DNA from: Macrostomum lignano | Taxonomy: Eukaryota | Reading direction: 5' to 3' | Assembly: GCA_002269645.1 (NCBI GenBank) | Contig: NIVC01000284.1 | Location: 310,001 to 374,000 of the forward strand | DNA: 64,000 nucleotides | In this document: positions 1,085 through 52,527 of the stretch, one piece after another | Position numbering within the stretch: the first letter of the stretch is position 1 | Layout: each line of letters starts with the position of its first letter | The notes under the pieces: model-generated | The model's database searches: none | What the model saw: the letters and a program-made list of their open reading frames with translations, nothing else | Told to the model about the DNA's origin: nothing | Program-made: the position numbers and the translations under genes

Positions 1085-2770
1085 TCAGTCCATGTCGATT
1101 TCAACAACAGATACGGATGATGCAGAAGTTTTGCCATCAGAATCTCGCTCCTTAGAAGACACCCGATCGACCCTTTTAGAATACCATAATAAAATAATGT
1201 CGTGAAGCAGCTCGAGCAGCTCGCACAGAGTCAGCAGCGACATGCCCAGATAAATTCCCATGATGCCGCCTACCTCTGAGACGAAACTTGAGAAGTCATA
1301 GTCAATAGAAAACGTGATCTTATTGCACATAACGCAACCTGGTTTAATGTGAACTTTAAGCAAGTTGTCGCGAACATAGGAGGCAACACTCGATGCGTTG
1401 CCAGTCATGAGAAAGTCGAGCGCAGGTACGCTGAGGTTCCTGGCCTTGGCTCTTGACCAGGCCTGCCTCACAGAGAAACTGATAAACGAATTCAGAGAGC
1501 TTTGAGTCGGCCAGTCGGCACTGGAGATGCTGGCACTGTAGTCCAGTGTGCTGCAAAGTCGTTTTCCTTTGCATGCAGTCCGAACATTGCCTGACACACT
1601 CTGGATCGCTGCTGAAAGGGATTCGTTTTTGACATCCATCGTCAAATAGTTTGTCGTAGCCGAACAATTATACAAATAGTTACGATTCCTTAGTTGCCAT
1701 GGTAGAGGGTTTATTGAGCCAGAGATATTGAAAGTCGATTGAAACTGCCGATGGTATTCAAAGTAGTAGCAGTAAGAATAACTGTACGCATGGCTGTACG
1801 CAGACAGGTCGTAAGGATTCGTAAAATGAACTTCGGACAGTTGGGGCAGACAGTCAAACTGGTTCTCTGTGAATAAATTTCTAACCATTTCAATTTCGAC
1901 GGTGTGATATTTCCCAGGACTCAGCGAGAAGGAGCTCACAAGTTCAGACGGATACTCGCCAGGTGGGCTTAGAAAAAGCTTCACTGCAGCCAATCTGTCC
2001 GGTTCTGCAAAGCCGTTCACTGACAGCAGCCAGTCGGACACTGGGATCTCTGTGCCGTCTGGGAAGCCGGTTTTCCACGAAGAAAGATGACTACGGCTAG
2101 GTTTTACAAAGGACGAGTTTGTGTCCAATAGCAGAGTAACAGTGAGTCCCGCCCAGTACTCGGACGCGGTCACTTTATCTTGCAGTGTACTGTTGATAGT
2201 CCACTTTAGGCAGCGAAGATACAGCGGATGGTTGAATGCCTTGGTTTCTACTGAAACATGAGTTGACAGTCCAGTTTCGTGTAGATACATTATGCTGCTT
2301 GAAATGACGCTTTGTTCGACTCTGTGAGCCAGCTTGTCGAATAGCAACTTGTATGGTAGACCTTGTAAAAACATTAAGCTGCTATTAGCGATTATTTGTT
2401 CCGTGTATTCGTCGCTGAAATTATGCTTATTCGCAAACTGCTTCAGCTGGGCCACGCATTGGCTAAAGCTATCATTGATTGCCACCACAGTGTCGCTGTC
2501 CATGAAACTGGAGTAGCTGCCCGACACTGGATTCTCAAAGCACATGTACACATCCGGGAACTGGAACTTCTCGCCTTCCCATTCGATTGAACTCGTCACT
2601 TTTCGGGACCTCAGCTTAGTGACAAACTTGCAGAAGCTCTCTAGAAACAAACCAAACATGAGCAGGAACAGAAGTAGCCAAGCCACTCTAACATAGATTG
2701 GCTTGCTTGAGAGAACTCTTGGCAGTCCGTGAGCAGTCGTTTGAGTTAGGGCGAGCTTAACCTGCTGCAT
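1085..2770 (-). CDS. DEG/ENaC family channel subunit, array copy 1 (561 aa, single-exon CDS)
   Basis: N-terminal TTAHGLPRV (HG motif), TM1 VAWLLLFLLMFGLFL, FPDVYMC, TM2 FVSEVGGIMGIYLGMSLLTLCELLE with a GxS filter. The ORF is uninterrupted. Confidence 0.93.
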   Translation of the reverse strand: MQQVKLALTQTTAHGLPRVLSSKPIYVRVAWLLLFLLMFGLFLESFCKFVTKLRSRKVTSSIEWEGEKFQFPDVYMCFENPVSGSYSSFMDSDTVVAINDSFSQCVAQLKQFANKHNFSDEYTEQIIANSSLMFLQGLPYKLLFDKLAHRVEQSVISSSIMYLHETGLSTHVSVETKAFNHPLYLRCLKWTINSTLQDKVTASEYWAGLTVTLLLDTNSSFVKPSRSHLSSWKTGFPDGTEIPVSDWLLSVNGFAEPDRLAAVKLFLSPPGEYPSELVSSFSLSPGKYHTVEIEMVRNLFTENQFDCLPQLSEVHFTNPYDLSAYSHAYSYSYCYYFEYHRQFQSTFNISGSINPLPWQLRNRNYLYNCSATTNYLTMDVKNESLSAAIQSVSGNVRTACKGKRLCSTLDYSASISSADWPTQSSLNSFISFSVRQAWSRAKARNLSVPALDFLMTGNASSVASYVRDNLLKVHIKPGCVMCNKITFSIDYDFSSFVSEVGGIMGIYLGMSLLTLCELLELLHDIILLWYSKRVDRVSSKERDSDGKTSASSVSVVEIDMD

Positions 2771-3868
2771 AATTTCGCAGACTCTGTTTCCACGAATTCG
2801 ATATATTATATTCTGTCTCGTTTTGATCCTTGGGTTTTCTCTTATAGGGTCAACAATGTTTGCTCTGCTTGTCTGCTTTGGTACTCTCGAGAATTTGATT
2901 AGCCTGCAGTCAGTGTCTCTATAGCCAAATATTAATTACATCCGCGAACAACGTCTAGTATATTTGTATAGTATTATCTAGACTAACAGATGCTGTGTGC
3001 TGACGTCTTAAGTTCCATCTATGAGTTTCATTTTGGTAAACCAATTTGTTTGATTGATATTATTGCTAGTTAGCTAACACAAGTTTCTGGAGCCCAAGTC
3101 ACATGGCAAATGTAATACTCATTTAGCCGAGTTGCTTTTACAAGCCCAAAATTTCGTTAATTTCGTTAACGGAAGAAACTAGCAAGACATTTGAACTAAG
3201 CGAAGTCTCTAGCTTATGAACGATTCTTCCTTTTGACCGGTGTGAAATTTCGAGCTTTTTAACTTCTGTTAAGACAGCTATTGTCTACTAGTAGAGAAGA
3301 AAAAAGAAAGCAAAAATAATAGGTAAGGAGTGTCAGTGTCTGCTTGCGTTCATTTTTATACAGTAATATATCCTTTTTTTAGTTTAATTAGTATGACATT
3401 TAATATTACTTACCGTATGTTAATTCGTTTTAAAAAAAGAGTATTTTGTTAAAACGCCCACAAACTTCAGAAAATTCCAGTGAGCTGATTTACAATGTAT
3501 TATTAACCAGCACATGCCACCGAAATCTTCCAGATCCTCACGCAATCTTTCAAATTTCACACAAGACTCGACAAACAACAAAACCACCGCATCGCACTAC
3601 TTTTTTTATTTATGCTACAACTGGTCTGGGATGAGAGTCCAACATGTCCGAATCGAAACCGCAACAACAGTCACTACTGTCGGTAGGCTCCGAGAATGCT
3701 GACATCAGCATCAGAATGCATACATTCTGAGTTACAAAAGAGGTCAATAGCAGGCCTCTTCCAGCTCATTTTACATCAAATTTTAGTCAAGGATTCGTAA
3801 ACAATAAACAAATTATTTATACAATACCAAGGCCACCCGTCATGGTAGCAAATATTAGGCAAAGACTG

Positions 3869-5506
3869 TCAAGTCGCTGTCTCAGGATCAGTTTCTTCCG
3901 AAGCCGACTTGACTTTATCGCTCTTTGAGTAACTCCAGGCAGCAAGGTCGAACAGCAGCTCTAGCAGTTCGCAAAGAGTCAGCAGCGACATGCCCAAATA
4001 GATCCCCATGATGCCGCCAACATCCGATACAAAGTTAGAAACACCGTAGTCAATGGAGAAAGTTATCTTGTCACTTCTAATGCTCTTAGGTTTAAAGTGC
4101 ACCTTCAACAGGTTTTCTCGAGCATATGCGGCCACATCGGATGCCTTCCCATTCATCAGAAAGTCAAGCGCAGGTACACTGAGGTTCCTGGAATTCGCTC
4201 GAGTCCAGGCCTGTCTCACTGAGCTGTTGATGAAGGAAGCAAGGGAGCTCTGAGTAGGCCAGTCAGCGCCAGAGATGCTGGTGCTGTAGTCCAGTGTGCT
4301 GCAAGGCTGTTTTGTCAAACAGGTTTGTCGAACCTTTTCTGTAATGGTTGCCTGATTGATCAACACAGACGGATCCAAATCCATGTAATTTGGTGAACTA
4401 GAAAAGTTGTATAGATACTTCCTACTTCTTAGAGGCCACGGAAGTGGACTTATTTCGCCAGACAGATTGAAGAACTGCTGGAAAAGCTTGTGGTACTCAT
4501 AGTAGTAGCAGTAGGAGTAGCTGTACGAGTGACTGTACTTTGAGAGATCGTACGGGTTGGCGAACTGAACTTCGTGCCGGCTTTTAACACAATCGAACTG
4601 ATTTTCGGCGAGTACGTTCCGAATCTGTTCTATCTTGATCAAGTGGAATTTTCCTGGACTTAAAACGAATGAGTTCACAAAATCCGACGGGTACTCTCCA
4701 GCTGGACTCAAAAACACCCTCAGCCCTGCCACTCTGTCAGCTTCTGAGTAACCTTTCTCTGACATAGTCCAGTCAGAGACTGGTACGCCTGTGCCGTCTT
4801 GTCGAAAAGCCTTCAGCGGAATCGGGTATCCTCCTGACTTTACGAAGGACGAGTTGTTATCTAGAAGCAAAGTGACCGTGAGTCCGGCCCACGACTCGTC
4901 TGAGATAATTTTCTCCTGCCAGGTGCTGTTGATGGCCCACTGCAGACAGCGAAGGTACTGCGGATGGTTGAACTCATTGGCTTCCAATTCAGCTCGTCTC
5001 AGCTCTCCGTTGGCGCTGATGAAGCTGACACTGCTAGATATGACGCTCTGCTCGACTCGGTGAGTCAGACTGTCGAATAGCAGTTTGTAGGGCAGACTAA
5101 ACACGTAGGCGAAACTGTTTTGCATGACAAGCGCTTGCAGCTGCTTCTGAGTAAATCCGTGTTTAACTTTAATGTTCCTTAGCTCTTCATCTAGACTATT
5201 GAAGCTGTCATTGATGGCTCTGGCGGTGCTGCCACCAATGTTACCGGAATAGCTTCCAGACACAGGATTCTCAAAGCAAGCGTACACATCCGGGAGCTGG
5301 AACTTCTCGCTCCGCGATTCAATAGAAGACGTCACCAACTGAGATTTAAGCTTGTTGACAAAGTCGAAGAAGCTCTTTAGGAAGAGGCTAAACATGAGCA
5401 GAAAGAGTAACAGCCAGGCTATTCTCACGTAGATGGGCTTGTTTGAGACCACTCTAGGCAGTCCGTGAGATGTGGACTGAGTGAGCGCTAGCTGCAACTT
5501 CTGCAT
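3869..5506 (-). CDS. DEG/ENaC family channel subunit, copy 2 (likely start MQKLQLAL at 5506)
   Basis: STSHGLPRV, TM1, LPDVYACFENP, SDVGGIMGIYLGMSLLTLCE. The start was chosen by alignment to the paralogs; the ORF track extends to 5539. Confidence 0.93.
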   Translation of the reverse strand: MQKLQLALTQSTSHGLPRVVSNKPIYVRIAWLLLFLLMFSLFLKSFFDFVNKLKSQLVTSSIESRSEKFQLPDVYACFENPVSGSYSGNIGGSTARAINDSFNSLDEELRNIKVKHGFTQKQLQALVMQNSFAYVFSLPYKLLFDSLTHRVEQSVISSSVSFISANGELRRAELEANEFNHPQYLRCLQWAINSTWQEKIISDESWAGLTVTLLLDNNSSFVKSGGYPIPLKAFRQDGTGVPVSDWTMSEKGYSEADRVAGLRVFLSPAGEYPSDFVNSFVLSPGKFHLIKIEQIRNVLAENQFDCVKSRHEVQFANPYDLSKYSHSYSYSYCYYYEYHKLFQQFFNLSGEISPLPWPLRSRKYLYNFSSSPNYMDLDPSVLINQATITEKVRQTCLTKQPCSTLDYSTSISGADWPTQSSLASFINSSVRQAWTRANSRNLSVPALDFLMNGKASDVAAYARENLLKVHFKPKSIRSDKITFSIDYGVSNFVSDVGGIMGIYLGMSLLTLCELLELLFDLAAWSYSKSDKVKSASEETDPETAT

Positions 5507-6121
5507 GCTGTGGCCTCTCCAAGGCTGTTCGTGAAACACAAGCTGGTTTAACTTTAGCTTCTCTAACGGTTTTTGGTCTATTTAATAATCCCATTTACGT
5601 TTGCTTTGTGATGCAAATATCAGAATTTGCTGACTCATTTACCTATCTTCTGTTTGCATAAGCCGAGCAAACAGCTATCTGCACTGAGGTGTCATAGCAA
5701 AGTTTTAGCGAATTTTAAACTGCTAGCGCAATGTTGGCAAAGCAAATGGACTTTGATTCTCAAATCTATGTCAACATGAGCTGCTAATTTTTGCAATACG
5801 CTTTTATATACACTTCTACTTAATACACAGTAGGCAGATGATTGACAGGTAAGCTAAAGTGAAACTAACTAGAGACTATAGTGTATAAAACGTTAAATAT
5901 GCGACACCTTGAATCGCTTCAAATTCTTTAAAATAGAATTTCTATTGATTTTTTTGTTTTTAAAATTACATTACTAAAGTTCTTATCAGTATAAAATACA
6001 AGCCTAAATTTTACGCGGTTACAATCAAAACAACGTACGAGAGTATATAACGGACACTAATTCTCTGACACATAGATAGCTTTTTTGTTTAAACGTTCTG
6101 CTATAATTTCCTAATAAAAAT

Positions 6122-7804
6122 TCACTGAGGAGAAATTTTACAATTAGGCGATTGTACATGTACATTACACACTTCGACGTTACTAGTACTTCCATGAGAT
6201 GTGTCTGCATCGCGCCGTCGGCAAAACCGGGCAACAAAGTCGTGCAGCAGCTCCAGCAGCTCGCATAATGTCAATAGTGACATGCCCAAGTAGATACCCA
6301 TGACGCCGCCTACTTCAGAAACAAAATTCGAGAATCCATAGTCGATAGAAAAAACGATCCTGTCGCCACTGACGCTTTTTGCTTTGAAGTGCACCTTCAG
6401 CAAATTGTTGCGAACATACGACGCCACACTGGACGCATTTCCGGTCATGAGGAAGTCGAGCGCTGGTACGCTAAGGTTCCTGGATTTGGCTCTAGTCCAA
6501 GTCCGCCTTACTGAGCTGTTGATGAAGGAAAAGAGGGAGTTCTGGGTCGGCCAGTTGGTACTGGAGATGCTGGCAGCATAGTCCAGTGTGCTGCAGGGCC
6601 GCTTCTGTTTGCAAGCTTGTTGGATCTTTTCCGTTAGTTTTGTCTGTTCAAGCCATACTGAGCTGTCGTGGTCAACGCTGGCAAAGTGCGGTCGGGCAGA
6701 GATATTGTACAGATACTTCCGACTTCTCAGGGGCCATGGCAGCGGACCAATATGCCCGGACAGATTAAAAAGCTGCTGGGTCAAGCGGTGGTAAGCCTCG
6801 TAGAAGCAGTAGGAATAGCTGTAGGCATGGCTGATCGGTGACATATCGTACGGATCGACATACTGGACTTCTGGATGGCCGCTTCCAACACAGTCGAACT
6901 GATTTTCAGTTAGGCAATGCCGGTTCATGCCAATTTCAACTGTATAATATTTACCCGGACCGAGAGAGAACGAGTGCACGAAGTCCGATGGATACTCGCC
7001 AGGCGGAGTCAGGAACACCTTCAGTCCGGCAAGTCTGTCCGACTCTCTGTAGCCGCTAATTGAGAAGGTCCAATCGGACATCGGGACTTCAGTGCCATCT
7101 GGAATGAATGTCCGCTTCTTTATTGGAGAGCCATTCTGCTCGAAGAATGACGAGTCAGTGTCCAAAAGCAAGGTGACGGTGAGTCCAGCCCACGACTCGG
7201 TCGTGGTCATTTTCTCTTGCCAGGTGCTGTTGATTGTCCACTGTAGACATCGAAGGTACTGCGGATGGTTAAAAGCTCTTGTGTCAATCTGAGCATAAGT
7301 TGGCTCACCAACGTCGTTAATATAGATGATGCTGCTCGATATGACGCTCTGTTCGACTCTATGAGCCAGACTGTCGAATAAAATCGTGTAGGGCAGACCG
7401 AACACATATAAGAAGCTGCTTTCTACTTTTAGCTCTTGAAGCTTCTTTTCAGTATAGTTATGCCTGATCGCAAAACTTCTAATTTCTTCGTCCACAACGC
7501 TGAAGGTAGCATTAATTGTTGCCGCGGTGCTGTTGTCAATGACGCTGGAGTAGCTCCCGATATCGGTTTTCAAAGCAATGCACACATCCGGGAAACGGAT
7601 AGTCTCAACGCCCGATTCTATTGAGGTTGTCACCTTCTGCGACTGTAGCTTTTGAACGAATTCAAAGAAGCTCTTGAGAAACAGGCTGAGCATGAGCAGA
7701 TACAGCAGGAGCCAGGCTATCCGCACATACACAGGCTTGTTCGACACGACTCTTGGCAGTCCGTGCGAAGTCGTAGAGCTCACAGCTATTCTCACTTGCT
7801 GCAT
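6122..7804 (-). CDS. DEG/ENaC family channel subunit, copy 3 (560 aa as assembled; a short segment near 7556-7578 is locally out of frame)
   Basis: TTSHGLPRV, TM1, SEVGGVMGIYLGMSLLTLCE. FPDVCIALKTDIGSY is the paralog motif CFENPISGSY with three 1-nt losses. Confidence 0.92.
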   Translation of the reverse strand: MQQVRIAVSSTTSHGLPRVVSNKPVYVRIAWLLLYLLMLSLFLKSFFEFVQKLQSQKVTTSIESGVETIRFPDVCIALKTDIGSYSSVIDNSTAATINATFSVVDEEIRSFAIRHNYTEKKLQELKVESSFLYVFGLPYTILFDSLAHRVEQSVISSSIIYINDVGEPTYAQIDTRAFNHPQYLRCLQWTINSTWQEKMTTTESWAGLTVTLLLDTDSSFFEQNGSPIKKRTFIPDGTEVPMSDWTFSISGYRESDRLAGLKVFLTPPGEYPSDFVHSFSLGPGKYYTVEIGMNRHCLTENQFDCVGSGHPEVQYVDPYDMSPISHAYSYSYCFYEAYHRLTQQLFNLSGHIGPLPWPLRSRKYLYNISARPHFASVDHDSSVWLEQTKLTEKIQQACKQKRPCSTLDYAASISSTNWPTQNSLFSFINSSVRRTWTRAKSRNLSVPALDFLMTGNASSVASYVRNNLLKVHFKAKSVSGDRIVFSIDYGFSNFVSEVGGVMGIYLGMSLLTLCELLELLHDFVARFCRRRDADTSHGSTSNVEVCNVHVQSPNCKISPQ

Positions 7805-8633
7805 ATTTCTCTTGGCGCAGTGTATTTAATACTTTGATTCTAGGAGAGAAACTGATGATGTGTCAATGAGTTGTACTAATACTGCGCACACCAACGGTTC
7901 TCGTTTTGAGCCAGTGCTTAAATTAATCGGAATTAGCATGAACAGAAACTTATCAATGTTAAATTCACATACGAGGGCCTTGAGTGCTTTGCAATCAATT
8001 CTTGTAAGCGTATATTTACTGAATAAATAATGGCTTTGATTTATACGTCAAACATTTCCTTTTCCCTGGTCTGCCTTTCTGATAATAGCTCATTTTTTAT
8101 TGCCAATAATCGAATTTATTGCCGATAGAAGCGGCCTCGGCAATAGATTTGATAGATTGGCAGTTGATAGAATATGTTTGCCAAACTCATTGCATTAACT
8201 TCATCTTTTCCTGTACAGCTTTAGCAGTATTATTAAATCTTTCGACATTTGTGATCAGTAAGTCAGGATAGAAAGTAAATTTCACTGGCTCGCATCACAT
8301 CAGGTCTGATACACACGATTTTTGCTACAATTACGCTTTTGTTGGGAAAAACCTTTGTTTGGATAATATATATACGTAAATAGAAAACAGTACATTTTTC
8401 GTCAGACAATTCTCGAATACGAAGTCTCGTCAGAGAAGTTAGGGTAGCATCGATAAACAATAAAAAACCACTTAATGCTTTATTAAAGGCCTTGTCAATG
8501 ATAAACATTGCAAAGTTAAAGGCTATAAAAAAAGTATAAAGGATGCAGCGCTGCATGCGCTCATTACGGCATTAATGAGTCGTATAATAAGTTTAAAAAG
8601 CTGATTCAAACTTGAATTTCAGCTGCAAAAAAC

Positions 8634-10293
8634 TCAGCTTATTTCTAGAACAGATGTGGCTTTCGAGGAGGCGACATGACTCCCAACTGCATTCGCGGAA
8701 TGTCTACTCTTTGAAGTGCACCAAGCAAGAGTGTCATACAGCAGCTCAAGCAGTTCGCAAAGAGTTAGTAGTGACATGCCCAGGTAAATTCCCATGACGC
8801 CTCCGATATCCGATACAAAGTTTTCCAAGCCGTATTCCCTTGAGAACACCACTTTATTGCAGAGTACAGCAAGCGGCTTAAAGTGCACTTTCAAAACATT
8901 CTCTTGAATAAACGAAGCGACACTGGATGCGTTTCCTGTCATCAGAAAGTCTAGCGCAGGTACACTGAGGTTCCTGGCCTTGGCTTGAGTCCAGGTCTGC
9001 TTCACCGAGCTGTTGATGAAGGAAGCAAGCGAGCTTTGAGTTGGCCATTTGCACTGGTGATGCTCGCCTTGTACTGCTGGCTGGTGCACGGACGTTGCAG
9101 CTGACAGTATTTATCGATATTGTCAAGCAGTTCAGTAAAAAAGTCGGGCTTCACCTCAGCCGCGGACGTGTCTGCCAGGCTGGGCTCGCCGGTAAAATTG
9201 AATGCATGGTTCTTCCCTCTCAAAGGCCACGGCAGAGGACCGATCCCTCCGGACATGTTAAGCGTTTCTTGAAGACCTTTGTTATACAACGCGTAGTAGC
9301 AGTAGAAATAGCTGTAGGTGTGATTATACGGAGTGTCATCATACGGATTCACAAACTGCACTGCGGGACTGTCACCGCGACACGAGAACTGGCCAGCTCT
9401 GTACTCCTGCTGCAGCATCTCGATTTCGACTGTGTGGTGCTTTCCCGGACCCAGGACGAACGAGCTCACGAACTCGGACGGGTATTCGCCTTGCGGTGCG
9501 AGGAATACTCGAATTCCGGCGCTCCTGTCTGGCTCAAAGATGTCACGCATTGATAGAGACCACTCCCAGACTGAGAGCAAGCTGTAGTTTGAGTACACCA
9601 TGCGTGAATTGGCGCGCCATTGGATTCGATCTCCGATGCGCTCGAGTCGATGAGCAGCGTTGCAGTGATGCCGGCCCACGAGCCGGACTTCAACACGGTT
9701 TTCTGCCAGTCTTTGTCCAGGGTCCACTTCGAGCACCGAAGGTACGTGGGATGAAAGAAGCTGGTCGCTTCAATATGTTTGTACTGGGGAGTGCTGCGTT
9801 TTCCTCTATACAGGACGCCACTTGAGATGACAGATTGCTCGGCCCTGTGGGCCAGCGCGTCGACCAAAAGCGAGTAGGGAAGCGAATGCACGTAAACGAA
9901 TGTAACCGGCCGAATGTTTTCGTCCCTACCAGACTGATTTCTAGTTGTAAAAAATTGTCGAATTTTCCTTGTTGTATTACTTAATAGAGAGTTGATCTCC
10001 AGTGCTATCTTCTTGTCTACATTTACCGCGTAGCTGGCCGACACGGGAGTTTCATGGCAGGCGTAAATATCCGGAAACTGGAAGGTGACGGAGTTCGCCT
10101 CAATCGAGCTGGTTTGCGGATTCGCGATGAGTTTCTCAGTGAATCGAACTAGGCTGTTTAAAAACAAGACAAGCATGAAGGAGAACAGAGCCAACCAGAT
10201 CAGCCTGACAAACAGTGGTTTCTCGCTGCTGACGGTTCTCGGCAGTCCATGAGCGCTGCTGGACTCCAGCGCTGATCGAAACAGCTGCTTCAT
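8634..10293 (-). CDS. DEG/ENaC family channel subunit, copy 4; split in this sequence by two 1-nt deletions (about 9604/9605 and about 9048-9050)
   Basis: ORFs 9466-10293, 9002-9736 and 8634-9089 each carry consecutive parts of the paralog protein. Restoring one base at each junction gives a full-length, stop-free channel. Confidence 0.85.
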
Positions 10294-11276
10294 GCTGCTC
10301 AGTTGAGGTTTTTGCTAGGAACAAATCTACTTAACTGCTTGCTCTACAGATAGGTTATACTTTTTAGCCCCGGTTTTCTGGCTGATTGCAAACAATCTAT
10401 TTGCGAAAAGTTCAGTTGAAAGGATTTATTTGTTGAGCTAATGTAATGCTAATTAATGACCAGCTCAGTTAATAGCATAAAATACTCATCAAATCTACCG
10501 TATTGTTTGCCAAATAACAAGCAAAAGCGTGTGTCAGTGCAGCTAATTGATTTCCATTATTGTAGAAATAAAACACCTGTGTGTCACTGATAAACCTATT
10601 TTGCAGACTGGTCAGCTTCATCTTCTATTGCTCTGTCGTATCATTCGCTCTCAGCAGTATTTAAAAGTGGCCATGAAGAGATCGCTTTAGCACACCGGAG
10701 AGTGAGAAGAGAGAGAGAGAGCGAATTATGTAAGAATGTCTAAACGCACGAACTCCCACTTTCAGACCGCAAGTCTGAGAACAAAATTTTGTAATCACTT
10801 ACTTCTAGTATCGCGTGCTCCTCTTCCTGTTGTTCCAGTTTTTCTGCGCGCGGTGTTCTCTTCTTCAATTCTGACAGTTGCCGTATACAAGACCGATGTT
10901 AGTTTACGAAACAGTTCAACTCGTCGGCGTTAGCGTTATTCCTTGAGTTCAGTAAGCGAAATTAGAGATGTGGCCTAATAATACAAGAAAAAACAGAAAG
11001 GACGTCTTCTTTTAGAAATAACGGAATTGAATTTGAGTTCACCAATTTTCAACTCTAGAGTAAAGAAATCAATCGTTAATCAAAAATTTATAAATCCTCT
11101 TAGGGTATCGAAATCGTTTCAAGGATAGTGTTTGTACTTCGAGTGTTTTATTACTCACTCACAGTAGCATTTTATGAATGAATCAACCTCTACCTCAGAT
11201 TATTGACTTCGACGCCATTGTTAACGCGCTGACATCCACCCGCTACCAGACGATCTGACGCTGCCGACGGAGACAC

Positions 11277-11660
11277 ATCGTTGCTATTCCAAAGAAGCGG
11301 GGCACCACATTACTAGAAGAGGACCGAGGCATCTGCCTTCAATCTTCCGCTGCGAATTTGTTTGATCGGGTGCTGTTATCGCAGTTGCAGTCGGTGCTGG
11401 ATTCGAACCTGCGCTCTGAGCAGAACGTCTTCTGGCCCCATTGCGGCACAGTGACGCAGATCCTAGCTCTTCGCCGAGTCATCGATGAGATGCGGATACG
11501 CCAGTCGATCCTGATTGTCTCTTCATAGATTTCGAGGAGACATTCGTAAAGTAATTCGTAATTCGTAATTCGTAAAGGCTCGGTCGTAAAGTCCATGCTA
11601 TTAAAGATACTCCGTGCCCTACGGCGTCTCAGATCAGCTTGTCTCCGGTAATCATGGCTA
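11277..11660 (+). mobile_element. Degenerate non-LTR retrotransposon (LINE, RTE-like) reverse-transcriptase fragment
   Basis: The plus strand translates as IVAIPKKRG...RGICLQSSAANLFDRVLL...LRSEQNVF...TVTQILALRRVIDE...FIDFEETF...MLLKILRA/YGVSDQLV. This matches the LINE RT pattern IVPIPKKG-YRGISL-EQxGFR-QIxxLR-FIDFxKAF-LxxYGV, with frameshifts. Confidence 0.78.
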
Positions 11661-11689
11661 CGTATGTACCTTTAACCATGAATGCGATA

Positions 11690-11954
11690 GGATTTAAAGC
11701 AGATTTTCAAAGCAGGCGTACATAGGAACATCGGGAAAACTGGAACTTGTTGCACTACTCAGTTACAAGAAGGTTGTCGTCGGATTTAACTTTAGTTTGC
11801 TCAAGAGCTCCCGGAGGGCCCTGGCAAATAATTCTAGCATTGCGAGATGAATAATGGGCAAAACAAACACACGAAAACTGGTGTGCTGGTGACTAACAAG
11901 CGACAGTCCGTATGATGTCGGTGACCTGACTGCTGTTGCAACGGTAGCTTGCAT
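11690..11954 (-). pseudogene. Decayed 5' fragment of an eighth DEG/ENaC copy
   Basis: MQATVATAVRSPTSYGLSLV (HG motif decayed to YG), a TM1-like stretch, KLKLNPTTT, a stop, then TTCCAGTTTTCCCGATGT...TACGCCTGCTTTGAAAAT (the FQFPDV-YACFEN motif, frameshifted). No downstream channel sequence follows. Confidence 0.75.
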
Positions 11955-12927
11955 TTGGCAACATGTAAAATTAAAGTATGAACTATCTATTGAGTGTTTA
12001 TGCAGCTCGGATATGATTCCTGTGAACCCTCATCCCTTAAGCACATTTATAAATGTAACAATGAACACTTTTATAAAAGGTCGTCACAAGCTGTACGAGC
12101 TAGTTGACAAAATAATGTCCAATGAGCCAATGAGTCGACAGGTTAATTTGAAAACATGGACATCGTCTTTGTCGTTATGGTCGTTGTTATATTATATTAT
12201 CGTCGTCAACAACATGTAGAAAGCATCTTAATTGTTAATCATTTGTATGCTACTGAGGAACTTGCAATGTACGAGTGAATCAAACTGTTTTCTAAAAATA
12301 GTCTTTTATCGAAATTGCTTTAGCATGTAGAAATGAAATACCAGAATTACAGGGTGCAGAATAAATTTACTGTATCAGAAAAGCATTCTAAGAAAATTGA
12401 TACTGTTGCTTAGTGTAGGCTACAGCAATAGTTAATTATAGCAAGGCCTAAATGAAGAGTAATCGTTGCATAAAGGAAATAACGAGACAAAAGTGTGCGA
12501 AGTCGCTGGGATGCAAATTAAGGAATCGAACAATCTAGTAGAGTTCGCATTTAGGACACAAAATAACCCAGACTTCAACAATACATATCGGTGCCCAAGG
12601 AAGTGCTTACATGCAAGTAAAAACTGGGGATACTTCATGTAAAGTGACTTGACGCCTAATTCCCATGAAAAGTTAGGAACAAGCCGTGATGATTAGAGCG
12701 ACGTATCCACGGCTGAATAAGTTTGCACGTTTGAATTAATGAAATTAAAGGGCACTCCAACAGACTCGTTCGAACCACTGGTTACATTTTCTGAACAAAC
12801 GCTTTGAATTTAGTTTTCGTAAAAATTAATTCCTGCGCACACGAATCTTGATTATAAGAGAATTATTGACGCATTGATTTTCAGAGGTAATTGATTAATT
12901 AAAAGCAGAGTCTCTTCAATTGACATT

Positions 12928-14568
12928 TCAATGCAGTGTTTTGACTGACATCTCGGACGAAGCTGCCACCGAAGTGGAACTCTTTGCTTTGCGCTGTGAG
13001 TTGCAATAGCTAATCAGATCGTAGATTAGTTCGAAAACCTCGCACAGAGTCAGAATCGACATTCCCAAGTAGATGCCCATGATTCCGCCAACGTCCGATA
13101 TGAAGTTGGACACTCCGTAGTCTCTAGAAAAGCTGACCTTGTCGCATTGCAGACTCTTCGGCTTGAAAAACACTTTAAGAAGATTCTTTTTCAGGTAAGT
13201 GAGCACGTCAACGTCACTACCGTTGAATAAAAAGTCAAGCACTGGCACGTCCAGGTGAAACATCTTTGCTTGGAGCCACACGGCTCCTACTGTGCTGTTG
13301 ACGAATCCAGTGAGCGATCCTTGTGTTGGCCAGTCGGAGCTGGATATTCTCACGCTGTATTCAATAGTGCTACAGGGTCGCTTGGACTCGCAAGCTTTTG
13401 TTGCATGCTGTTGAACATCGTCAATATTATTTATTAACTCTGAGTTCGGGTAAATATCAAGAACATTCGGCGTTGAAGTGACATTGAACATGTAATCTTT
13501 GTGTCTCAGTTCCCAAGGCATCGGGGTCTTATCCCCGGACATGTTCAGCGCTCTCTGGTAGAGACTTTGGTACTCATAGTAGAAACAGAATGAGTAGCTG
13601 TAAGAATGATTGTACGGCGTCCGGTGGTACGGATTCAAGAACTGCACATCCGGCATCGGGCTCAGGCAGTCGAACTGGCCAGCCTTGTACTCCTGCTGCT
13701 TCATGTCAATCTCCACGGTGTGATACTTTCCCGGGCCGAGTGAAAATGAGGTCACAAAGTCGGTCGGGTACTCGCCGGGAGGTGCCAAGTAGATTCGAAG
13801 TCCCGATGCTCGGTCCGGGGCTAAGAGATCGCCGGACGAGAGGCTCCAGTCGGAGACCGGTATTGCAGACTCCATCGTATACACTGCGTCTCTGATGGGC
13901 GCTCCGTTCGCCGGTATATATGAGGAGTTTTCATCGAGTAGAACTTTGAGTAGCAGTCCGGAATTGGCTCCGCTTCTTCCTAAAAGCTCGGCTTCGGCGC
14001 CACTGAGTACGAATTTGGCGCATCCCAGGTGGATCGGGTGATAGAATATACTGCTATTCAACTTACGGTAGTGCGGCATTCCAGCCGAGTCTTTGTAAAC
14101 TATGCCGCCGACTAAAATGCTCTGCTCATGCCTTTTTCCTAAAGTATCCACCAGCAGTTGATACGGTAAAGAGTGAGGCTGAACAAACGAAAAGCCTCTA
14201 ATGAACAAATCTTGGTTACCGTATCCAAAGCTGTATGCTGACAGTATATCAAAGGTCCGATTGATTCGGTTGTTAATTTCGGCAGCTGAATGTGGATGGA
14301 GATTAGCGGCATAGCTGCCCGAGATCGGATTTTCAAAGCAGACGTACACGTCAGGAAACTGGAAGCTGGCGCCGTTCACTTCCAGCGAGTTTGTTGCCGG
14401 ATTGGATCGAAGCTTCCCAACAAACTCGACGAAACCGCGGAGAAACAGCGCCATGGTGACGCAGAACAGCAGTAGCCAGGCGACTCTCACGTACAGGGGC
14501 TTGCCGGTGACAAGGCGCGACAGGCCGTGAGCCGTAGTGGTCTCGAGAGCAGCTCTCAGGTGATGCAT
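12928..14568 (-). CDS. DEG/ENaC family channel subunit, copy 5 (546 aa, single-exon CDS)
   Basis: TTAHGLSRL, TM1, FQFPDVYVCFENPISGSY, SDVGGIMGIYLGMSILTLCE. The ORF is uninterrupted. Confidence 0.93.
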   Translation of the reverse strand: MHHLRAALETTTAHGLSRLVTGKPLYVRVAWLLLFCVTMALFLRGFVEFVGKLRSNPATNSLEVNGASFQFPDVYVCFENPISGSYAANLHPHSAAEINNRINRTFDILSAYSFGYGNQDLFIRGFSFVQPHSLPYQLLVDTLGKRHEQSILVGGIVYKDSAGMPHYRKLNSSIFYHPIHLGCAKFVLSGAEAELLGRSGANSGLLLKVLLDENSSYIPANGAPIRDAVYTMESAIPVSDWSLSSGDLLAPDRASGLRIYLAPPGEYPTDFVTSFSLGPGKYHTVEIDMKQQEYKAGQFDCLSPMPDVQFLNPYHRTPYNHSYSYSFCFYYEYQSLYQRALNMSGDKTPMPWELRHKDYMFNVTSTPNVLDIYPNSELINNIDDVQQHATKACESKRPCSTIEYSVRISSSDWPTQGSLTGFVNSTVGAVWLQAKMFHLDVPVLDFLFNGSDVDVLTYLKKNLLKVFFKPKSLQCDKVSFSRDYGVSNFISDVGGIMGIYLGMSILTLCEVFELIYDLISYCNSQRKAKSSTSVAASSEMSVKTLH

Positions 14569-15189
14569 GCCTTCTGTTCTGGGTCTTTAGCGACAAGGTG
14601 GCTCAAGGTATGCCTGACTCAAATATATTAGCAGATGAACTGGCTTGCTTTGTACTCGTATCTTTCTGCGAGGCTGATGTGAGTAACTTGCTTAATTAGA
14701 GTTAGTAATCAATCGACCAATGCCACTCGGTGCCAAATTAGGAACGCCAATTCCCCTCTTCACTTAATCCCAGCATTGTCTCCATCTCTCAGTTATTGTC
14801 GGAAGCGTCTATTGTTTGCCTAATCGTTGCTTAGCAACATAACTGCCGTATGTCACAGGACTATGGGTTGAAAAGGACGCGATAAACCTTTATTGCACTG
14901 GCCACTGTTCGTGAGTGGTAGAAAACACGAACGAAATTTCCCATTTATGTTAGGAGGCAAATAATAACAAAACTTTGACTTATGTTACAGAAATACAATT
15001 CTATACGAGTGACTTTTAATGATTAGCAAGTTTTGTCTTTATAATTACTCTTACGTAATTTTACCTGTGAAATATTAAAATATGAATGATGAAATCCGGC
15101 ATATGATCAATATAGTGACGACATTCGTTTTGAAAATACTTGAAAATACAAATATTGTATTTTATTGCCTCGTGACATTATTGCCCTAC

Positions 15190-16804
15190 TCAGTTTTCAA
15201 CTTGTTGCTGCGACTTCTTCGACTTGTAGATAGCGACAATATTGTAAATTAGTTCGAATAGTTCGCACAAGGTGAGCAGCGACATGCCCAGGTAGATTCC
15301 CATAGTGCCGCCAATTTCTGCAACAAAGTTCTCCAGTCCATAGTCCCTTGAGAACACAATTTTATCGCTTAGCGTTTGCGACGGTTTAAAGTGCACTTTA
15401 AGCAGGTTCTTGCGAACATACAATGACACAACCGAATCGTTTCCAGTCATTAGAAAGTCCAGAGCAGGCACGCTGAGGTTCCTGGCGTTGGCTTGAGTCC
15501 AGGCCTCCCTGACCGTGCTGTTGATGAAGGAGAAGATGGAGCTGTCTATGGGCCAGTCAGCGCTGGAGACACTCGAGCGGTACTGAAGGCTGCTGCACGG
15601 CCGATCCAACTGGCAGTTTTCCTCGACATTAGCAATGGCGTCTTCTATAGTCGAATAGTCAGAATGGTTCAACTTCAGACTGGCAAAGTTTGGCTCTCCA
15701 GTCAGGTTAAAGACATATTTTTTACCCGAAGAGGCCATGGCAAAGGTCCTATATCGCCCGAGAGATTATACAATCTTTGAATGATTTCATGATATGACTT
15801 GTAGAAGCAGTAGGAATAGCTGTAGGTGTGATTGTACGGAGTGTCATCGTACGGATTCACAAACTGCACTGCGGGACTGTCACCGCGACACGAGAACTGG
15901 CCAGCTGTGTACTCCTGCTGCAGCATCTCGATTTCGACTGTGTGGTGCTTTCCCGGACCCAGGACGAACGAGCTCACGAACTCGGACGGGTATTCGCCTT
16001 GCGGTGCGAGGAATACTCGAATTCCGGCGCTCCTGTCGGCCTCGAAGTAGTCGCGCAGCGAAAGAGACCACTCCCAGACTGAGAGCAAGCTGTAGTTTGA
16101 GTACACCATGCGCTGAATTGGTGCGCCATTGGATTCGATCTCCGATGCGCTCGAGTCGATGAGCAGCGTTGCAGTGATGCCGGCCCACGAGCCGGACTTC
16201 AACACAGCAGTCTGAAATTCTTTGTCCAGGGTCCACTTGAAGCACCGAAGGTAAATCGGGTGAAAGAAGCTGGTCGCTTCAATATGTTCGTAGTGGGGAG
16301 TGCCACGTTTTTCCCTGTACAGGACACCACTTGAGATGACAGATTGCTCGGCCCTGTGGGCCAGCGCGTCGACCATAAGCGAGTATGGTAGAGAGAATAC
16401 ATAGAAGAATGTATTTGGCGGCATGGTTTTGCTTTCGTCTGTCTCGTTTAGATATTTTTTGCTAAGTATTCCCGTATGGATGGCGTTGTGGAGTTCATTA
16501 TTGAATTAATCGCATTTGCAGCAATCCTGTCCACATTGACTGCGTAGCTGGCAGAGAAAGGAGTCTCGTGACAGGCGTAAATATCGGGAAACTGGAACAC
16601 CACTTTGTTCGCTTCCAAAGTGCTAGTTTGCGGATTTGCAGCAAACTTTATTGAAAACAGAAACAATCCTCGCAAAAAGCAGCCGGCCATGAGAAGAAAT
16701 AAAGCCACCCATATTAGACGGATGAGCAGCGGTTTACTGCTCACGGTTCTCGGTAGACCGTGAGCCGAGGTCGATTCTAAGGCCGCCTTTACTTGCTGCT
16801 TCAT
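15190..16804 (-). CDS. DEG/ENaC family channel subunit, copy 6; split by two 1-nt homopolymer contractions (T6 at 16455-16460, C3 at 15725-15727)
   Basis: ORFs 16448-16804, 15702-16424 and 15190-15738 are consecutive parts of one channel. Adding one base at each run gives ...LAKKYLNETDESKTMPP... and ...WPLRGKKYVFNLTG... Confidence 0.87.
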
Positions 16805-17507
16805 TTTGTTCGGTAATATTGCGAGCCTAGGAGGATAAAGCGTCTGGCTAACTTGTGTGTTGGACAGTTAATTGGTTATATACTCAAATACGCTGGTTGA
16901 TATCGATTGGTTGCGTATCGGGAAGTTGACAGACTTAGTAATCAAACTAGACAGACTGCTGCAGTGGGAATGTACATGTATTGCTGAACCATTGCGCAAA
17001 TCATAGACTCATATTGGTTTTGTGTGAGCTCACACCGTTTGCATAGGCTTTATCTACGCGCTCATAAGTCAACTTGCTTTCGCAAGCAGGCGGACGAGCG
17101 TATAGTAATTAATCACGTAGCAATTTTTAACTGTAGATTTGTTTTACTGCAAAATTCTATAACGAGATAGAAATTGTATTGTTTTGCCCTATCTCCTTTA
17201 GAATTTTGATCTGAAAATGAAGCAAGTATCTAGCTACGAGTATGTAATCTTTTTATGTCTGATAATTTATAGAATTCGTATACATGTATTCAATGGTAAA
17301 TATTCGATAGACTCAATTAAATGTTATGCACAAGAGCTTAGTCATGACTGCATGATCTGCATAAATATGAAAATGTAGCTATGAGATTATCAATGCAAAT
17401 AGTAAAACCAAGGAACACCACGGATTCGAAAGATAAATTCACAGTCCGATTTCAATTTTTTTTTTCAATTAGTGTTTGCTTGAGAAATAGTAGAACATGC
17501 CTGTAAT

Positions 17508-19175
17508 TCACTGACTGCTTTCCACGAAAGTCGGCTCTTTACACATTGTTTTGTCAGGTTCAACCGTCTTCGGTCGTCTCTGAGTGTTCCAAGCCGTGAT
17601 CAAGTCGTAGAAAAGCTCTATCAGCTCGCACAGTGTGAGCAGCGACATGCCCAAATAGATGCCCATGATTCCACCAACGTCCGAGATGAAGTTAGAAATA
17701 CCGTAGTCCTTGGAGAATGTCACTTTGTCGGACAAAGCGCTGCGCGGCTTAAAATTCACCTTTAGCATGTTTTGACGCACGTAGCTGGTCACACTAGAAC
17801 TGTTCCCAGTCAATAGGAAGTCAAGCGCTGGCACGCTTTGGTTTTTGGATTTGGCCCGCAACCAGGCCTGTCTGACCGTGCTTTGGATGAAAGGCATCAG
17901 AGAGCTCTGACTAGGCCAATCGGAACTTGAGATGCTCACCTTGTAGTCCCGGGTAGTGCAGGGCCGCTGTGACCCACATTTATCTTGTGCAACTTCGTAA
18001 GCATCTTCAACAGCGCTAAAGTCGGACAGCGGATCGAGGCTCATTGCTAAAAAGTTTGGCTCGCCAGTCACATTAAGCAGATACTTCTTCCCAACCAATG
18101 GCCAGGGCAGAGGACTAACGTCTCCAGATAGATTGAAGAGCGCTTGGAACTGTTTATGGTACTCGTAGTAGTAGCAATAGGAAAAGCTGTAGATGTGATT
18201 GTAAGGAGTCTGGTCGTATGGGTTCACGAACTGGACCGCGGGGGTCTCCGCGCGACAGTTGAACTGACCCGCCTTGTACTCTTGCTGAGTCATGCTAATT
18301 TCAACTTTGTGATGCATACCAGGGCTCAGCGAGAACGAGTTCACAAAGTCGGACGGGTACTCTCCTGGAGGGGTCAGGAACACTCGAACGCCGGAAGTTC
18401 GGTCGGGTCCGAAAAAGTCGTTCGACAGCATGGTCCAGTCCGAAACAGGTAGAGCAGCTTCTTCACCAACGGTGTAAACCATCGGAAGAATTTTCGTGCC
18501 TCCAGAAGTCACCTCAGTGGAGTTCCCGTCAATTAAAAGTGTCACAGCGAGTCCAGTTGATAAACCACTTTTGGCCAACTTTTTCTGCGTAGCTCTATCC
18601 AACGACCACTTGAAGCACTGGAGGTAAAGCGGATGATAGAACACCGTGGCATGGACGTTAGTGTAGTCCGGAGAGCCGCCGCTCTCCATGAAGACAATTC
18701 CACTGCTCAGAACTCCCTGTTCGATTCTGTGGCTTAGCGAGTCAACCAGTAGTTTAAAAGGCAGCGACTGCGGATAAAAGAAGCTCAACTCGCGCTCTTT
18801 CGCCAACATTTCTGTGCTAGATAAGTTTCTCTGCATTAAAAACGACTTCAAAACGCTACTGGCATTGAGCAGCTTGTCGTTGATTAACTGAGCCGATTTC
18901 GAGTCAACGTTCGACGCATAGCTTCCAGACAGAGCGTTCTCGTAGCAGGCGTAGACATCGGGAAACTGGAATGGCAGCGAATTCGCTTCGAAGGACGTGG
19001 TCACCTGATGAGATTGCAGCTTGTTGATGAACTCAATAAAGCCTTTAAGAAACAGGGAAAGCATGAACAGGAACAGGAGCAGCCACAGGATGCGGATATA
19101 GATCGGCTTGTTTGACGCTACTCTGGGCAAGCCATGAAGTGATGTTGCCTCCAGAGCATTTTTTACTTGCTCCAT
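17508..19175 (-). CDS. DEG/ENaC family channel subunit, copy 7 (likely start MEQVKNAL at 19175)
   Basis: TSLHGLPRV, TM1, FQFPDVYACYEN, SDVGGIMGIYLGMSLLTLCE. The ORF track extends to 19214. Confidence 0.93.
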   Translation of the reverse strand: MEQVKNALEATSLHGLPRVASNKPIYIRILWLLLFLFMLSLFLKGFIEFINKLQSHQVTTSFEANSLPFQFPDVYACYENALSGSYASNVDSKSAQLINDKLLNASSVLKSFLMQRNLSSTEMLAKERELSFFYPQSLPFKLLVDSLSHRIEQGVLSSGIVFMESGGSPDYTNVHATVFYHPLYLQCFKWSLDRATQKKLAKSGLSTGLAVTLLIDGNSTEVTSGGTKILPMVYTVGEEAALPVSDWTMLSNDFFGPDRTSGVRVFLTPPGEYPSDFVNSFSLSPGMHHKVEISMTQQEYKAGQFNCRAETPAVQFVNPYDQTPYNHIYSFSYCYYYEYHKQFQALFNLSGDVSPLPWPLVGKKYLLNVTGEPNFLAMSLDPLSDFSAVEDAYEVAQDKCGSQRPCTTRDYKVSISSSDWPSQSSLMPFIQSTVRQAWLRAKSKNQSVPALDFLLTGNSSSVTSYVRQNMLKVNFKPRSALSDKVTFSKDYGISNFISDVGGIMGIYLGMSLLTLCELIELFYDLITAWNTQRRPKTVEPDKTMCKEPTFVESSQ

Positions 19176-26288: not shown

Positions 26289-31001
<4,713 letters not shown>

Positions 31002-52351: not shown

Positions 52352-52527
52352 ACTGGAGTGAACTCGGACAGTTGCAGAAACTATCGGGAAGGAGTGTTAG
52401 ATGTATTAATTTGATATAGACTTTTATCTATGGCATGACCGCCACTAGCATTACAGTATAACTTGAATGAGCGGTGCCTCGTTCTAAGGCCACAATAAAT
52501 AAAAGTGATGTGAGAGCTGCTCAACTG

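What the first reader, a model, noticed from the sequence alone, without database searches (positions are those of the whole stretch)
1085..19175. Tandem array of seven intronless, divergent DEG/ENaC channels: candidate lineage-specific sensory receptor cluster
Seen: seven co-oriented, full-length channel genes and one remnant packed into 18 kb. Each CDS is a single exon, whereas TTC16 and RBFOX in the same window are intron-rich. The pore (GGxMGIYLGMS) and the RNLSVPALDFL segment are conserved, while the region after FPDVY (finger-equivalent) differs strongly between copies. Established: DEG/ENaC genes usually have many introns; the finger domain binds peptide ligand in FaNaC; lineage-specific expansions such as Drosophila ppk serve chemosensation and mechanosensation. 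Inference: a retrocopy-founded birth-and-death array whose subunits could combine into trimers with different ligand specificities.
Basis: partly seen in the sequence, partly recalled or inferred. Interest (0 to 1): 0.78.

Follow-up and report, generated by a model that had tools for sequence, protein, structure and literature searches.

The report
Unannotated flatworm DEG/ENaC channel gene array
An 18-kb stretch of the flatworm Macrostomum lignano genome holds an old tandem family of intron-free sodium-channel (DEG/ENaC) genes, five intact and two broken, which is missing from public protein sets but is an ordinary kind of lineage-specific channel expansion.

Summary
The array is real. There are seven co-oriented DEG/ENaC loci on the minus strand plus one N-terminal remnant, but only five are intact single ORFs (A, B, C, E, G). 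D and F each carry two 1-bp frameshifts. One of F's is absent from a second assembly and the other lies in an A-run.

The window is Macrostomum lignano. The copies share 41-69% of their amino acids and their synonymous sites are saturated. dN/dS is about 0.13 among A, B and C. The flanks no longer align, and D and F share a ~600-nt gene-conversion tract. This is an old birth-and-death array under purifying selection, not a haplotype or assembly artefact.

With one UniProt paralogue, the seven form a 100%-supported clade inside an all-M. lignano clade, far from ASIC, ENaC and FaNaC (17-19% identity to solved structures, though the fold is clearly DEG/ENaC). The family has kept only 6 of the usual ~14 extracellular cysteines. 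The variable segments lie in the finger and thumb.

The array genes have no introns, but their M. lignano relatives have only 0-2 short introns, so a retrocopy founder is possible but not needed. None of the five proteins is in public protein collections, and GenBank's transcript-based annotation calls no gene across the E-F-G stretch it could be checked on. A sensory role is untested.

The parts
1085..2770 (-). Copy A: intact single-exon DEG/ENaC gene, 561 aa
   Evidence: ORF. Pfam ASC E 5.6e-37, profile positions 3-455 of 455. Groups with B and C, bootstrap 100.
3869..5506 (-). Copy B: intact single-exon DEG/ENaC gene. The ATG at 5506 aligns with the other copies' starts; the ORF stays open up to a GTG at 5539.
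6122..7804 (-). Copy C: intact single-exon DEG/ENaC gene, 560 aa
8634..10293 (-). Copy D: full-length but interrupted by two 1-bp deletions (~9600 and ~9050, neither in a long homopolymer). Probably a young pseudogene. There are no other stops and all motifs are kept.
   Evidence: Three-frame reading and paralogue alignment.
9300..9900 (-). Gene-conversion tract in D, matched by about 15810-16410 in F: 82-100% nucleotide identity in 50-nt windows, against 42-84% in the rest of the two genes.
   Evidence: Sliding identity. The cross-match of F in L005 to D in the window is 92.4% over 615 nt.
11697..11966 (-). Remnant R: degenerate N-terminal fragment (pre-TM1, TM1 and an FPDV..YACFEN motif in another frame), with stops and a frameshift.
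   Evidence: tblastn E 7.5e-4, family-profile hit E 0.0026, frames shown.
12928..14568 (-). Copy E: intact single-exon DEG/ENaC gene, 546 aa. It is the earliest-branching copy in the array clade.
   Evidence: It differs at 4 nucleotides (3 amino acids) from the Mlig_3_7 assembly.
15190..16804 (-). Copy F: full-length with two frameshifts in this assembly. One is at ~16455 (A6 where A7 would keep the frame; present in both assemblies). The other is at ~15728 (one G fewer than in Mlig_3_7, where the frame is kept). Status: polymorphic or young pseudogene, or a homopolymer miscount.
17508..19175 (-). Copy G: intact single-exon DEG/ENaC gene. The ORF is open to an upstream ATG at 19214 (568 aa), and Met14 at 19175 matches the paralogues' starts.
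   Evidence: Nucleotide sequence is 100% identical in Mlig_3_7. AlphaFold2 model pLDDT 88.3, pTM 0.81. Best PDB fold match is FaNaC1 8on9, E 1e-24.

Best explanation
This is an old tandem (birth-and-death) array of Macrostomum lignano-specific DEG/ENaC channel-subunit genes.

Shown. DNA-level tandem duplication produced at least eight paralogues: seven here plus UniProt A0A1I8GD92, whose location is unknown. They have since diverged to 41-69% amino-acid identity. Five are kept open by purifying selection. D and F were disrupted only recently, or in F's case are polymorphic or mis-assembled. One copy has decayed to a stub, and D and F exchanged about 600 nt by gene conversion.

Shown. The proteins have the DEG/ENaC fold and the gating and pore motifs: HG, a small Ser/Ala at what I recall to be the 'degenerin' position three residues before the GG (a reading from memory of MEC-4 and ASIC, not tested here), the G-M-S filter and the TM2 glutamate. 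They have lost most of the canonical extracellular disulfides, especially the thumb ladder. Sequence change is concentrated in the finger and thumb.

Inferred. They most likely assemble as trimeric, Na+-selective channels gated by an extracellular stimulus (a small ligand, peptide, proton or mechanical force) in a small number of cells. Different copies would give different stimulus specificity, in the way ppk, degenerin and HyNaC expansions do.

Inferred. The absence of introns is best read as the end-point of an intron loss that runs through the whole M. lignano clade, not as proof of a retrocopy founder.
For: Family and fold: Pfam ASC end-to-end. PDB sequence hits to FaNaC and ASIC. AlphaFold2 pLDDT 88.3. 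Foldseek best hit FaNaC1, E 1e-24, TM 0.56/0.60, with ASIC next. Invariant H27-G28, G522-M523-S524 and E530.

Species and reality of the locus: the neighbouring ABC ORF is 100% and 99% identical to M. lignano proteins. GenBank contig NIVC01000232.1 is 99.07% identical to window 11601-27087, with the same R-E-F-G order.

Age and selection: nucleotide identity is 52-67% between most copies and 75% for D/F. pS is 0.69-0.79, and dN/dS is about 0.13-0.14 for A/B/C. The intergenic flanks no longer align.

Clade: the seven copies plus P0001 have bootstrap 100, P0002 is sister with bootstrap 100, and the whole group of nearest relatives is M. lignano only.

Cysteine loss: 6-10 extracellular cysteines in the five intact copies (6-7 in four of them, 6 conserved across all), against 14-16 in most typical outgroups. 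The lost columns are at G positions 171, 184, 360, 362, 379 and 396.

Variable segments: finger and thumb.

Introns in relatives: P0004 has none, P0002 one (77 nt), P0005 one (88 nt) and P0003 two. The P0003 and P0005 introns share one alignment column.
Against: There is no expression or functional evidence. GenBank's transcript-derived annotation has no gene over E, F and G, and none of the five proteins is in a 15-billion-protein collection. They may therefore be very weakly expressed or silent in the sampled stages.

Two of seven copies are disrupted. Higher variability in the thumb may simply reflect relaxed constraint after loss of the disulfides rather than ligand-driven diversification. 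The tree is neighbour-joining on Poisson distances with anonymous outgroups, so its deep placement is only approximate.
Confidence: 0.72

Rival explanations
1. Retrocopy founder. One processed mRNA of an intron-bearing DEG/ENaC gene was reverse-transcribed and inserted here, picked up a promoter, and was then amplified by tandem duplication.
For: All seven copies lack introns, in a genome that averages 4.9 introns per gene. The nearest out-paralogue, P0002, keeps one GT..AG intron at a position equivalent to G residue ~303, so an intron-bearing relative does exist.
Against: No poly(A) tract, target-site duplication or flank homology is detectable, and none would be expected at dS > 2. The wider M. 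lignano clade is already intron-poor (0-2 short introns). P0004 lost all of its introns independently. Members of the anonymous sister group are also single ORFs on short contigs. Gradual, cDNA-mediated intron loss in place fits equally well.
Confidence: 0.3
2. Silent relics. The array is a decaying, unexpressed set of duplicates with no present function.
For: Two copies have frameshifts and one is a stub. There is no gene model over E-F-G in the transcript-based GenBank annotation. The proteins are absent from public protein sets.
Against: Five ORFs of about 550 codons remain open despite saturated synonymous divergence, and dN/dS is about 0.13. All gating and pore motifs are invariant. Apart from their frameshifts, D and F have no stops, so decay is recent and limited.
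Confidence: 0.1
3. Non-sensory channels. The subunits serve epithelial Na+ uptake or osmoregulation, or act as neuropeptide-gated synaptic receptors, rather than as peripheral chemo- or mechanoreceptors.
For: The best sequence and fold matches are to peptide-gated FaNaCs. DEG/ENaCs are known to do all of these jobs (general knowledge of ENaC, FaNaC and HyNaC).
Against: The preference for FaNaC over ASIC is marginal (57 vs 51 bits; TM 0.56 vs 0.47). The M. lignano genes that a published tree places next to FaNaC are a different clade, about 20-30% identical over local alignments. A large, fast-diverging tandem family with low bulk expression is more typical of receptor repertoires.
Confidence: 0.3
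4. Assembly or haplotype artefact. The copies are uncollapsed alleles or homeologues of one or two genes in this hidden polyploid.
For: M. lignano has many >95%-identical duplicated blocks (PMC5730564).
Against: The copies share only 52-75% of nucleotides. An independent assembly shows the same R-E-F-G order at 99% identity.
Confidence: 0.02

Closest known systems
FMRFamide-gated Na+ channels (FaNaC; PDB 8on7-8ona Malacoceros FaNaC1, 7yvb/7yvc Aplysia FaNaC)
   Same: FaNaCs give the best sequence and fold matches among solved structures: profile E 9e-15 and Foldseek E 1e-24, TM 0.56/0.60. They share the two-TM topology, the HG motif, the G-x-S filter and an extended helical finger. They are spiralian channels.
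   Different: Identity is only 15-19%. The array belongs to an M. lignano-only clade, not the FaNaC clade. It has 6 conserved extracellular cysteines rather than the full set. The M. lignano genes nearest FaNaC in Dandamudi et al. 2022 (PMC9234716) are other genes, about 20-30% identical over local alignments, and those gave no peptide response.
Acid-sensing ion channels (ASIC1, ASIC2, ASIC5)
   Same: Same fold (TM 0.40-0.47 by query length, 0.51-0.62 by target length). TM2 and palm sequences are similar (E 6e-13).
   Different: 16-19% identity. The thumb disulfide ladder is missing. There is no phylogenetic affinity. Proton gating was not tested.
Lineage-specific DEG/ENaC expansions such as Drosophila pickpocket (ppk), C. 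elegans degenerins, and Hydra HyNaC or Nematostella NeNaC
   Same: All are large, fast-diverging, partly clustered species- or clade-restricted families, used for chemo- and mechanosensation or peptide gating (general knowledge; Elkhatib et al. 2022 also note separate divergent platyhelminth clusters).
   Different: This is an independent expansion in a macrostomid flatworm. It is wholly intronless, cysteine-poor, and so far unannotated and uncharacterised. ppk26 in the PDB matches only TM2 (E 1e-6).
Other M. lignano DEG/ENaCs of the same clade: A0A1I8GD92 (P0001), BOX15_Mlig033047g1 (P0002), Mlig026138 (P0004), Mlig031004 (P0003), Mlig003674 (P0005)
   Same: Same species and same clade (bootstrap 100). 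They share the reduced cysteine set, the motifs and the intron poverty. P0001 nests inside the array clade.
   Different: P0002 to P0005 are 25-36% identical to G. Each is solitary within +/-10 kb, has a transcript-based gene model, and carries 0-2 short introns.

Membership tests
DEG/ENaC superfamily (Pfam ASC, PF00858) | Full-length match to the family profile above the curated threshold | tested here: met
   Five intact ORFs score 124-156 bits against a cut-off of 23.6. In A, B, C and G one match covers profile positions 2/3-455 of 455; E matches in two stretches.
DEG/ENaC superfamily (Pfam ASC, PF00858) | Two transmembrane helices flanking a large extracellular domain with a palm, finger, thumb and knuckle fold | tested here: met
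   AlphaFold2 model of G: pLDDT 88.3, TM1 at 38-68, TM2 at 506-546. The top 50 Foldseek PDB hits are all FaNaC or ASIC, E 1e-24 to 7e-17.
DEG/ENaC superfamily (Pfam ASC, PF00858) | N-terminal His-Gly gating motif and G/S-x-S selectivity filter in TM2 | tested here: met
   H27-G28 and G522-M523-S524 are invariant in the five intact copies and P0001, and are retained in the conceptual translations of D and F.
DEG/ENaC superfamily (Pfam ASC, PF00858) | Canonical set of about 14 conserved extracellular cysteines (disulfide-rich thumb) | tested here: not met
   Only 6 are conserved (C90, C200, C320, C347, C413, C419). Six columns that are Cys in at least 54% of the other 28 aligned sequences are not Cys here. 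This is a derived loss inside the family and is no reason to exclude the genes from it.
DEG/ENaC superfamily (Pfam ASC, PF00858) | Trimeric, amiloride-sensitive, Na+-selective current | not testable with these tools
   Needs heterologous expression and electrophysiology.
FaNaC / WaNaC peptide-gated channels | Placement inside the FaNaC clade in a phylogeny | tested here: inconclusive
   No named FaNaC sequence was in my tree. The array sits in an M. lignano-only clade. The M. lignano genes that a published tree puts beside FaNaC belong to another cluster, about 20-30% identical over local alignments.
FaNaC / WaNaC peptide-gated channels | Activation by FMRFamide or related peptides | not testable with these tools
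   No functional data exist for this clade. Dandamudi et al. tested other M. lignano genes.
ASIC | Orthology to the ASIC clade and proton gating | not tested
   Only fold and sequence similarity at 16-19% identity was seen. Proton-sensing residues could not be aligned with confidence.
Processed retrogene (retrocopy) | No introns while the parent gene has introns | tested here: inconclusive
   The array copies have none. The nearest out-paralogue, P0002, has one 77-nt intron, but P0004 has none and the clade is intron-poor throughout.
Processed retrogene (retrocopy) | Poly(A) remnant and target-site duplications at the insertion | tested here: inconclusive
   No poly(A) remnant was recognised: only a 10-nt A-run was seen in the one 3' flank read directly (below G), and poly(A)-signal hexamers are scattered in the 3' flanks. 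Target-site duplications were not searched for specifically. The flanks share no similarity. At dS > 2 such traces would have been erased.

The most novel reading that the evidence does not exclude
The array is part of a previously unrecognised, Macrostomum-specific family of cysteine-poor, intronless DEG/ENaC subunits that serves as a chemoreceptor repertoire. The copies would be expressed one or a few per sensory cell, and their divergent finger and thumb surfaces would bind different environmental or conspecific cues. That would be an independent invention of ionotropic chemoreception in flatworms.
Probability: 0.25. Interest if true: 0.6.

Novelty: new member of a known kind. Interest (0 to 1): 0.33.

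Why it matters
M. lignano is a transgenic flatworm model, and its sensory receptors are largely unknown. This locus adds at least five intact channel genes that current public protein sets and the GenBank annotation miss. Together with their relatives, they define a species- or genus-restricted DEG/ENaC clade for which no functional data exist.

The progressive loss of the thumb disulfide ladder is a natural experiment on how much of the DEG/ENaC extracellular scaffold can be dispensed with. Beyond that, lineage-specific tandem expansions of DEG/ENaC genes are common in invertebrates, so the finding extends a known pattern and does not change it.

Tried and rejected
1. The word-indexed protein search, with one copy and with the six-sequence alignment, returned only P0001. 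The family is too divergent for that index. The exhaustive profile search was what worked.

2. Exact look-ups of G and P0001 found no contig.

3. The first tree attempts failed. Biopython bootstrapping timed out, and the Kimura distance gave NaN at p > 0.85. I replaced them with Poisson-distance neighbour-joining and 200 bootstraps.

4. pS is 0.6-1.0 and the Jukes-Cantor correction is undefined in most segments.

5. The bacterial promoter/terminator scan is irrelevant to a eukaryote. A search for shared upstream 8-mers and for poly(A) signals showed no common motif.

6. I tried to identify the anonymous sister group. Its one sampled contig comes from run DRR639838. That contig does not reveal the organism, and no paper cites the run.

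7. Literature searches for this array or for M. lignano sensory-cell expression found nothing specific.

8. I rejected the idea that the frame changes in D and F are small introns, because the reading frames overlap at each junction and each is a 1-nt indel relative to the paralogues.


Full report
**Observation**

All ORFs of interest lie on the minus strand. There are five uninterrupted ORFs:
- A, 1085-2770
- B, 3869-5506 (the ORF is open up to a GTG at 5539)
- C, 6122-7804
- E, 12928-14568
- G, 17508-19175 (the ORF is open up to an ATG at 19214)

Each matches Pfam ASC (PF00858) over essentially the whole profile, with E 1e-35 to 2e-45.

tblastn and a six-frame scan with a profile of the family find two more full-length loci and one short remnant, and nothing else in the 64 kb. 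These are D (8634-10293), F (15190-16804) and the remnant at 11697-11966.

D and F each read through in three successive frames. Alignment to the paralogues shows that each junction is a 1-nt indel, not an intron:
- D: about 9600 and about 9050.
- F: about 16455, in an A6 run where A7 would keep the frame, and about 15728.

**Source and reality of the locus**

The neighbouring 1091-codon ABC-transporter ORF (20363-23638) is 100% and 99% identical to Macrostomum lignano proteins.

The GenBank Mlig_3_7 contig NIVC01000232.1 (locus L005) is 99.07% identical to window 11601-27087 and has the same order, R-E-F-G-ABC-TPR. In that independent assembly:
- G is identical.
- E differs at four nucleotides.
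- F carries one extra G that removes its second frameshift, while the A-run frameshift is present in both assemblies.

The copies share only 52-75% of their nucleotides. Collapse of haplotypes or misassembly is therefore excluded. D could not be checked in the second assembly because the fetched stretch stops at window 10341.

**Age, selection and dynamics**

- Pairwise amino-acid identity is 41-62% between copies, and 69% for D/F.
- Synonymous sites are saturated (pS 0.69-0.79), and Nei-Gojobori dN/dS is about 0.13-0.14 for A, B and C.
- Spacers are 582-1403 nt long and share no detectable similarity.
- D and F are about 42-84% identical in 50-nt windows, except for a ~600-nt tract (D 9300-9900) that is 82-100% identical. 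This is a gene-conversion tract between non-adjacent copies.
- D's first deletion lies inside that tract and is absent from F, so it is more recent than the conversion.
- Apart from their frameshifts, D and F have no stop codons and keep every motif.

Together this is a classical birth-and-death array. The duplications are old, five copies have been under long purifying selection, and there is recent or polymorphic loss plus one decayed stub.

**What the proteins are**

The invariant features are the N-terminal H-G motif, the post-TM1 F-P-D-V motif, the TM2 sequence VGG(I/V)MGIYLGMSxLTLCE with a G-M-S filter, and the TM2 glutamate.

An AlphaFold2 model of G, built on a 40-sequence alignment, has pLDDT 88.3 and pTM 0.81. 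Its best PDB fold matches are Malacoceros FaNaC1 (E 1e-24, TM 0.56/0.60), then Aplysia FaNaC and the ASICs. Sequence similarity to solved structures is limited mainly to TM2 and the palm, at 57 bits for FaNaC and 51 bits for ASIC1.

Compared with 14-16 extracellular cysteines in most typical relatives, the array proteins conserve six. The missing ones include four columns of the thumb ladder, at G positions 360, 362, 379 and 396. The reduction is graded: 10-12 in the anonymous sister group, 6-10 in the M. lignano clade.

**Where the copies differ**

The mean pairwise identity along the alignment is lowest at three places and in the C-terminal tail:
- G residues 118-137 (0.12), which are finger helices in the model.
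- Residues 238-256 (0.26), a loop.
- Residues 375-413 (0.18-0.32), between and within the two thumb helices.

It is highest in TM2 (0.91).

The thumb hot-spot coincides with the lost disulfides. Relaxed structural constraint is therefore a simple alternative to ligand-driven diversification. The data cannot separate the two because dS is saturated.

**Phylogenetic position**

An exhaustive profile search of 1.84 billion representative proteins found only 19 with E < 1e-30. The top seven are all M. lignano proteins.

In a neighbour-joining tree with 200 bootstraps:
- The seven copies plus UniProt A0A1I8GD92 (P0001, about 50% identical to each copy) form a clade with support 100.
- BOX15_Mlig033047g1 (P0002) is its sister, also with support 100.
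- Four further M. lignano clusters and P0007 complete an all-M. lignano clade with support 100.
- The sister of that clade is a group of unnamed proteins from Logan and JGI contigs (one sampled contig comes from run DRR639838). I could not identify the organism.

The named outgroups are uncharacterised hemichordate, annelid, spider and scallop proteins.

Two of the three M. lignano channels tested with neuropeptides by Dandamudi et al. 2022 (PMC9234716) could be checked, Mlig049925.g2 and Mlig051885.g1. They are only about 20-30% identical over local alignments to the array proteins and cluster elsewhere. There are therefore no functional data for this clade. Elkhatib et al. 2022 had noted in passing that some platyhelminth DEG/ENaCs form separate, highly divergent clusters.

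**Introns and the retrocopy idea**

M. lignano genes average 4.9 introns (PMC5730564), and the adjacent TPR gene is multi-exonic. Seven intronless channel genes are therefore unusual for this genome.

However, their relatives in the same species are also intron-poor:
- P0004 has no intron.
- P0002 has one 77-nt GT..AG intron.
- P0005 has one 88-nt intron.
- P0003 has two.

The P0003 and P0005 introns fall in the same alignment column. P0004, which is sister to P0003, has lost them. Intron loss is thus recurrent in the clade. A retrocopy founder is possible, but it is neither required nor testable from this sequence, because no poly(A) tail or target-site duplication could survive this much divergence.

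**Annotation and expression**

None of the five intact proteins is present, as an exact sequence, in a 15-billion-protein collection. Searches of its 90%-identity clusters return only P0001.

The GenBank annotation of Mlig_3_7 was built from transcript evidence. It calls no gene across the 10 kb that holds G, F and E. This suggests, but does not prove, that whole-animal expression is low, as expected for receptors used in a few cells. It is also what silent genes would show.

**Verdict**

This is a real, old, tandem family of lineage-specific DEG/ENaC subunit genes in M. lignano. It is under purifying selection and has typical birth-and-death features. It is intronless, cysteine-poor and so far unannotated.

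That makes it a new member of a well-known kind of invertebrate channel expansion. It is useful for annotation and for flatworm sensory biology, but not surprising to a specialist. The sensory-receptor and heterotrimer ideas are reasonable analogies that remain untested.

Noticed in passing
window 1-624: Tandem array of a 16-nt unit (GACTTCACAAACCCTA, about 39 copies, 83% matches) at the left edge, just downstream of copy A. Whether the channel array continues beyond the window edge is unknown.
   Followed up: partly
window 20363-25736 (minus): ABCA-like transporter made of very long exons (ORFs of 1091 and 528 codons). The public models disagree: 803 aa in GenBank (P0164) against 1601 aa in UniProt (P0162). 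A paralogue 83% identical in the aligned part (P0163) suggests a homeologous copy of the region in this hidden polyploid.
   Followed up: partly
window ~11025-11601 vs L005 20838-21625: The two M. lignano assemblies differ by an indel of about 0.8 kb in the spacer between copy D and remnant R. L005 has about 790 nt with no counterpart here, and about 105 nt of the window (11025-11130) is unmatched.
   Followed up: no
window 50708-52351 (+) and 52381-53076 (-): Fragment of an LTR-type retroelement pol gene: the RT C-terminal end, RNase H and the integrase zinc finger (Pfam E 1e-33 to 1e-16). Next to it is an ORF on the opposite strand with no Pfam match.
   Followed up: partly
window 36.4-36.9, 42.8-43.4, 45.4-47.0, 48.0-49.8, 53.1-54.6, 56.0-56.7 and 59.5-59.9 kb: Dense micro- and minisatellite arrays produce long spurious ORFs in several frames (for example SIYL, CLSV, KILKVL and RERE repeats) and strong GC/AT-skew swings.
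   Followed up: no
P0001 (UniProt A0A1I8GD92); L002 9779-10001: UniProt labels P0001 'Acid phosphatase', although its only Pfam domain is ASC. The GenBank model of P0002 (BOX15_Mlig033047g1) appears truncated at the N-terminus: copy G aligns about 220 nt upstream of the annotated start.
   Followed up: partly
   Followed up: partly
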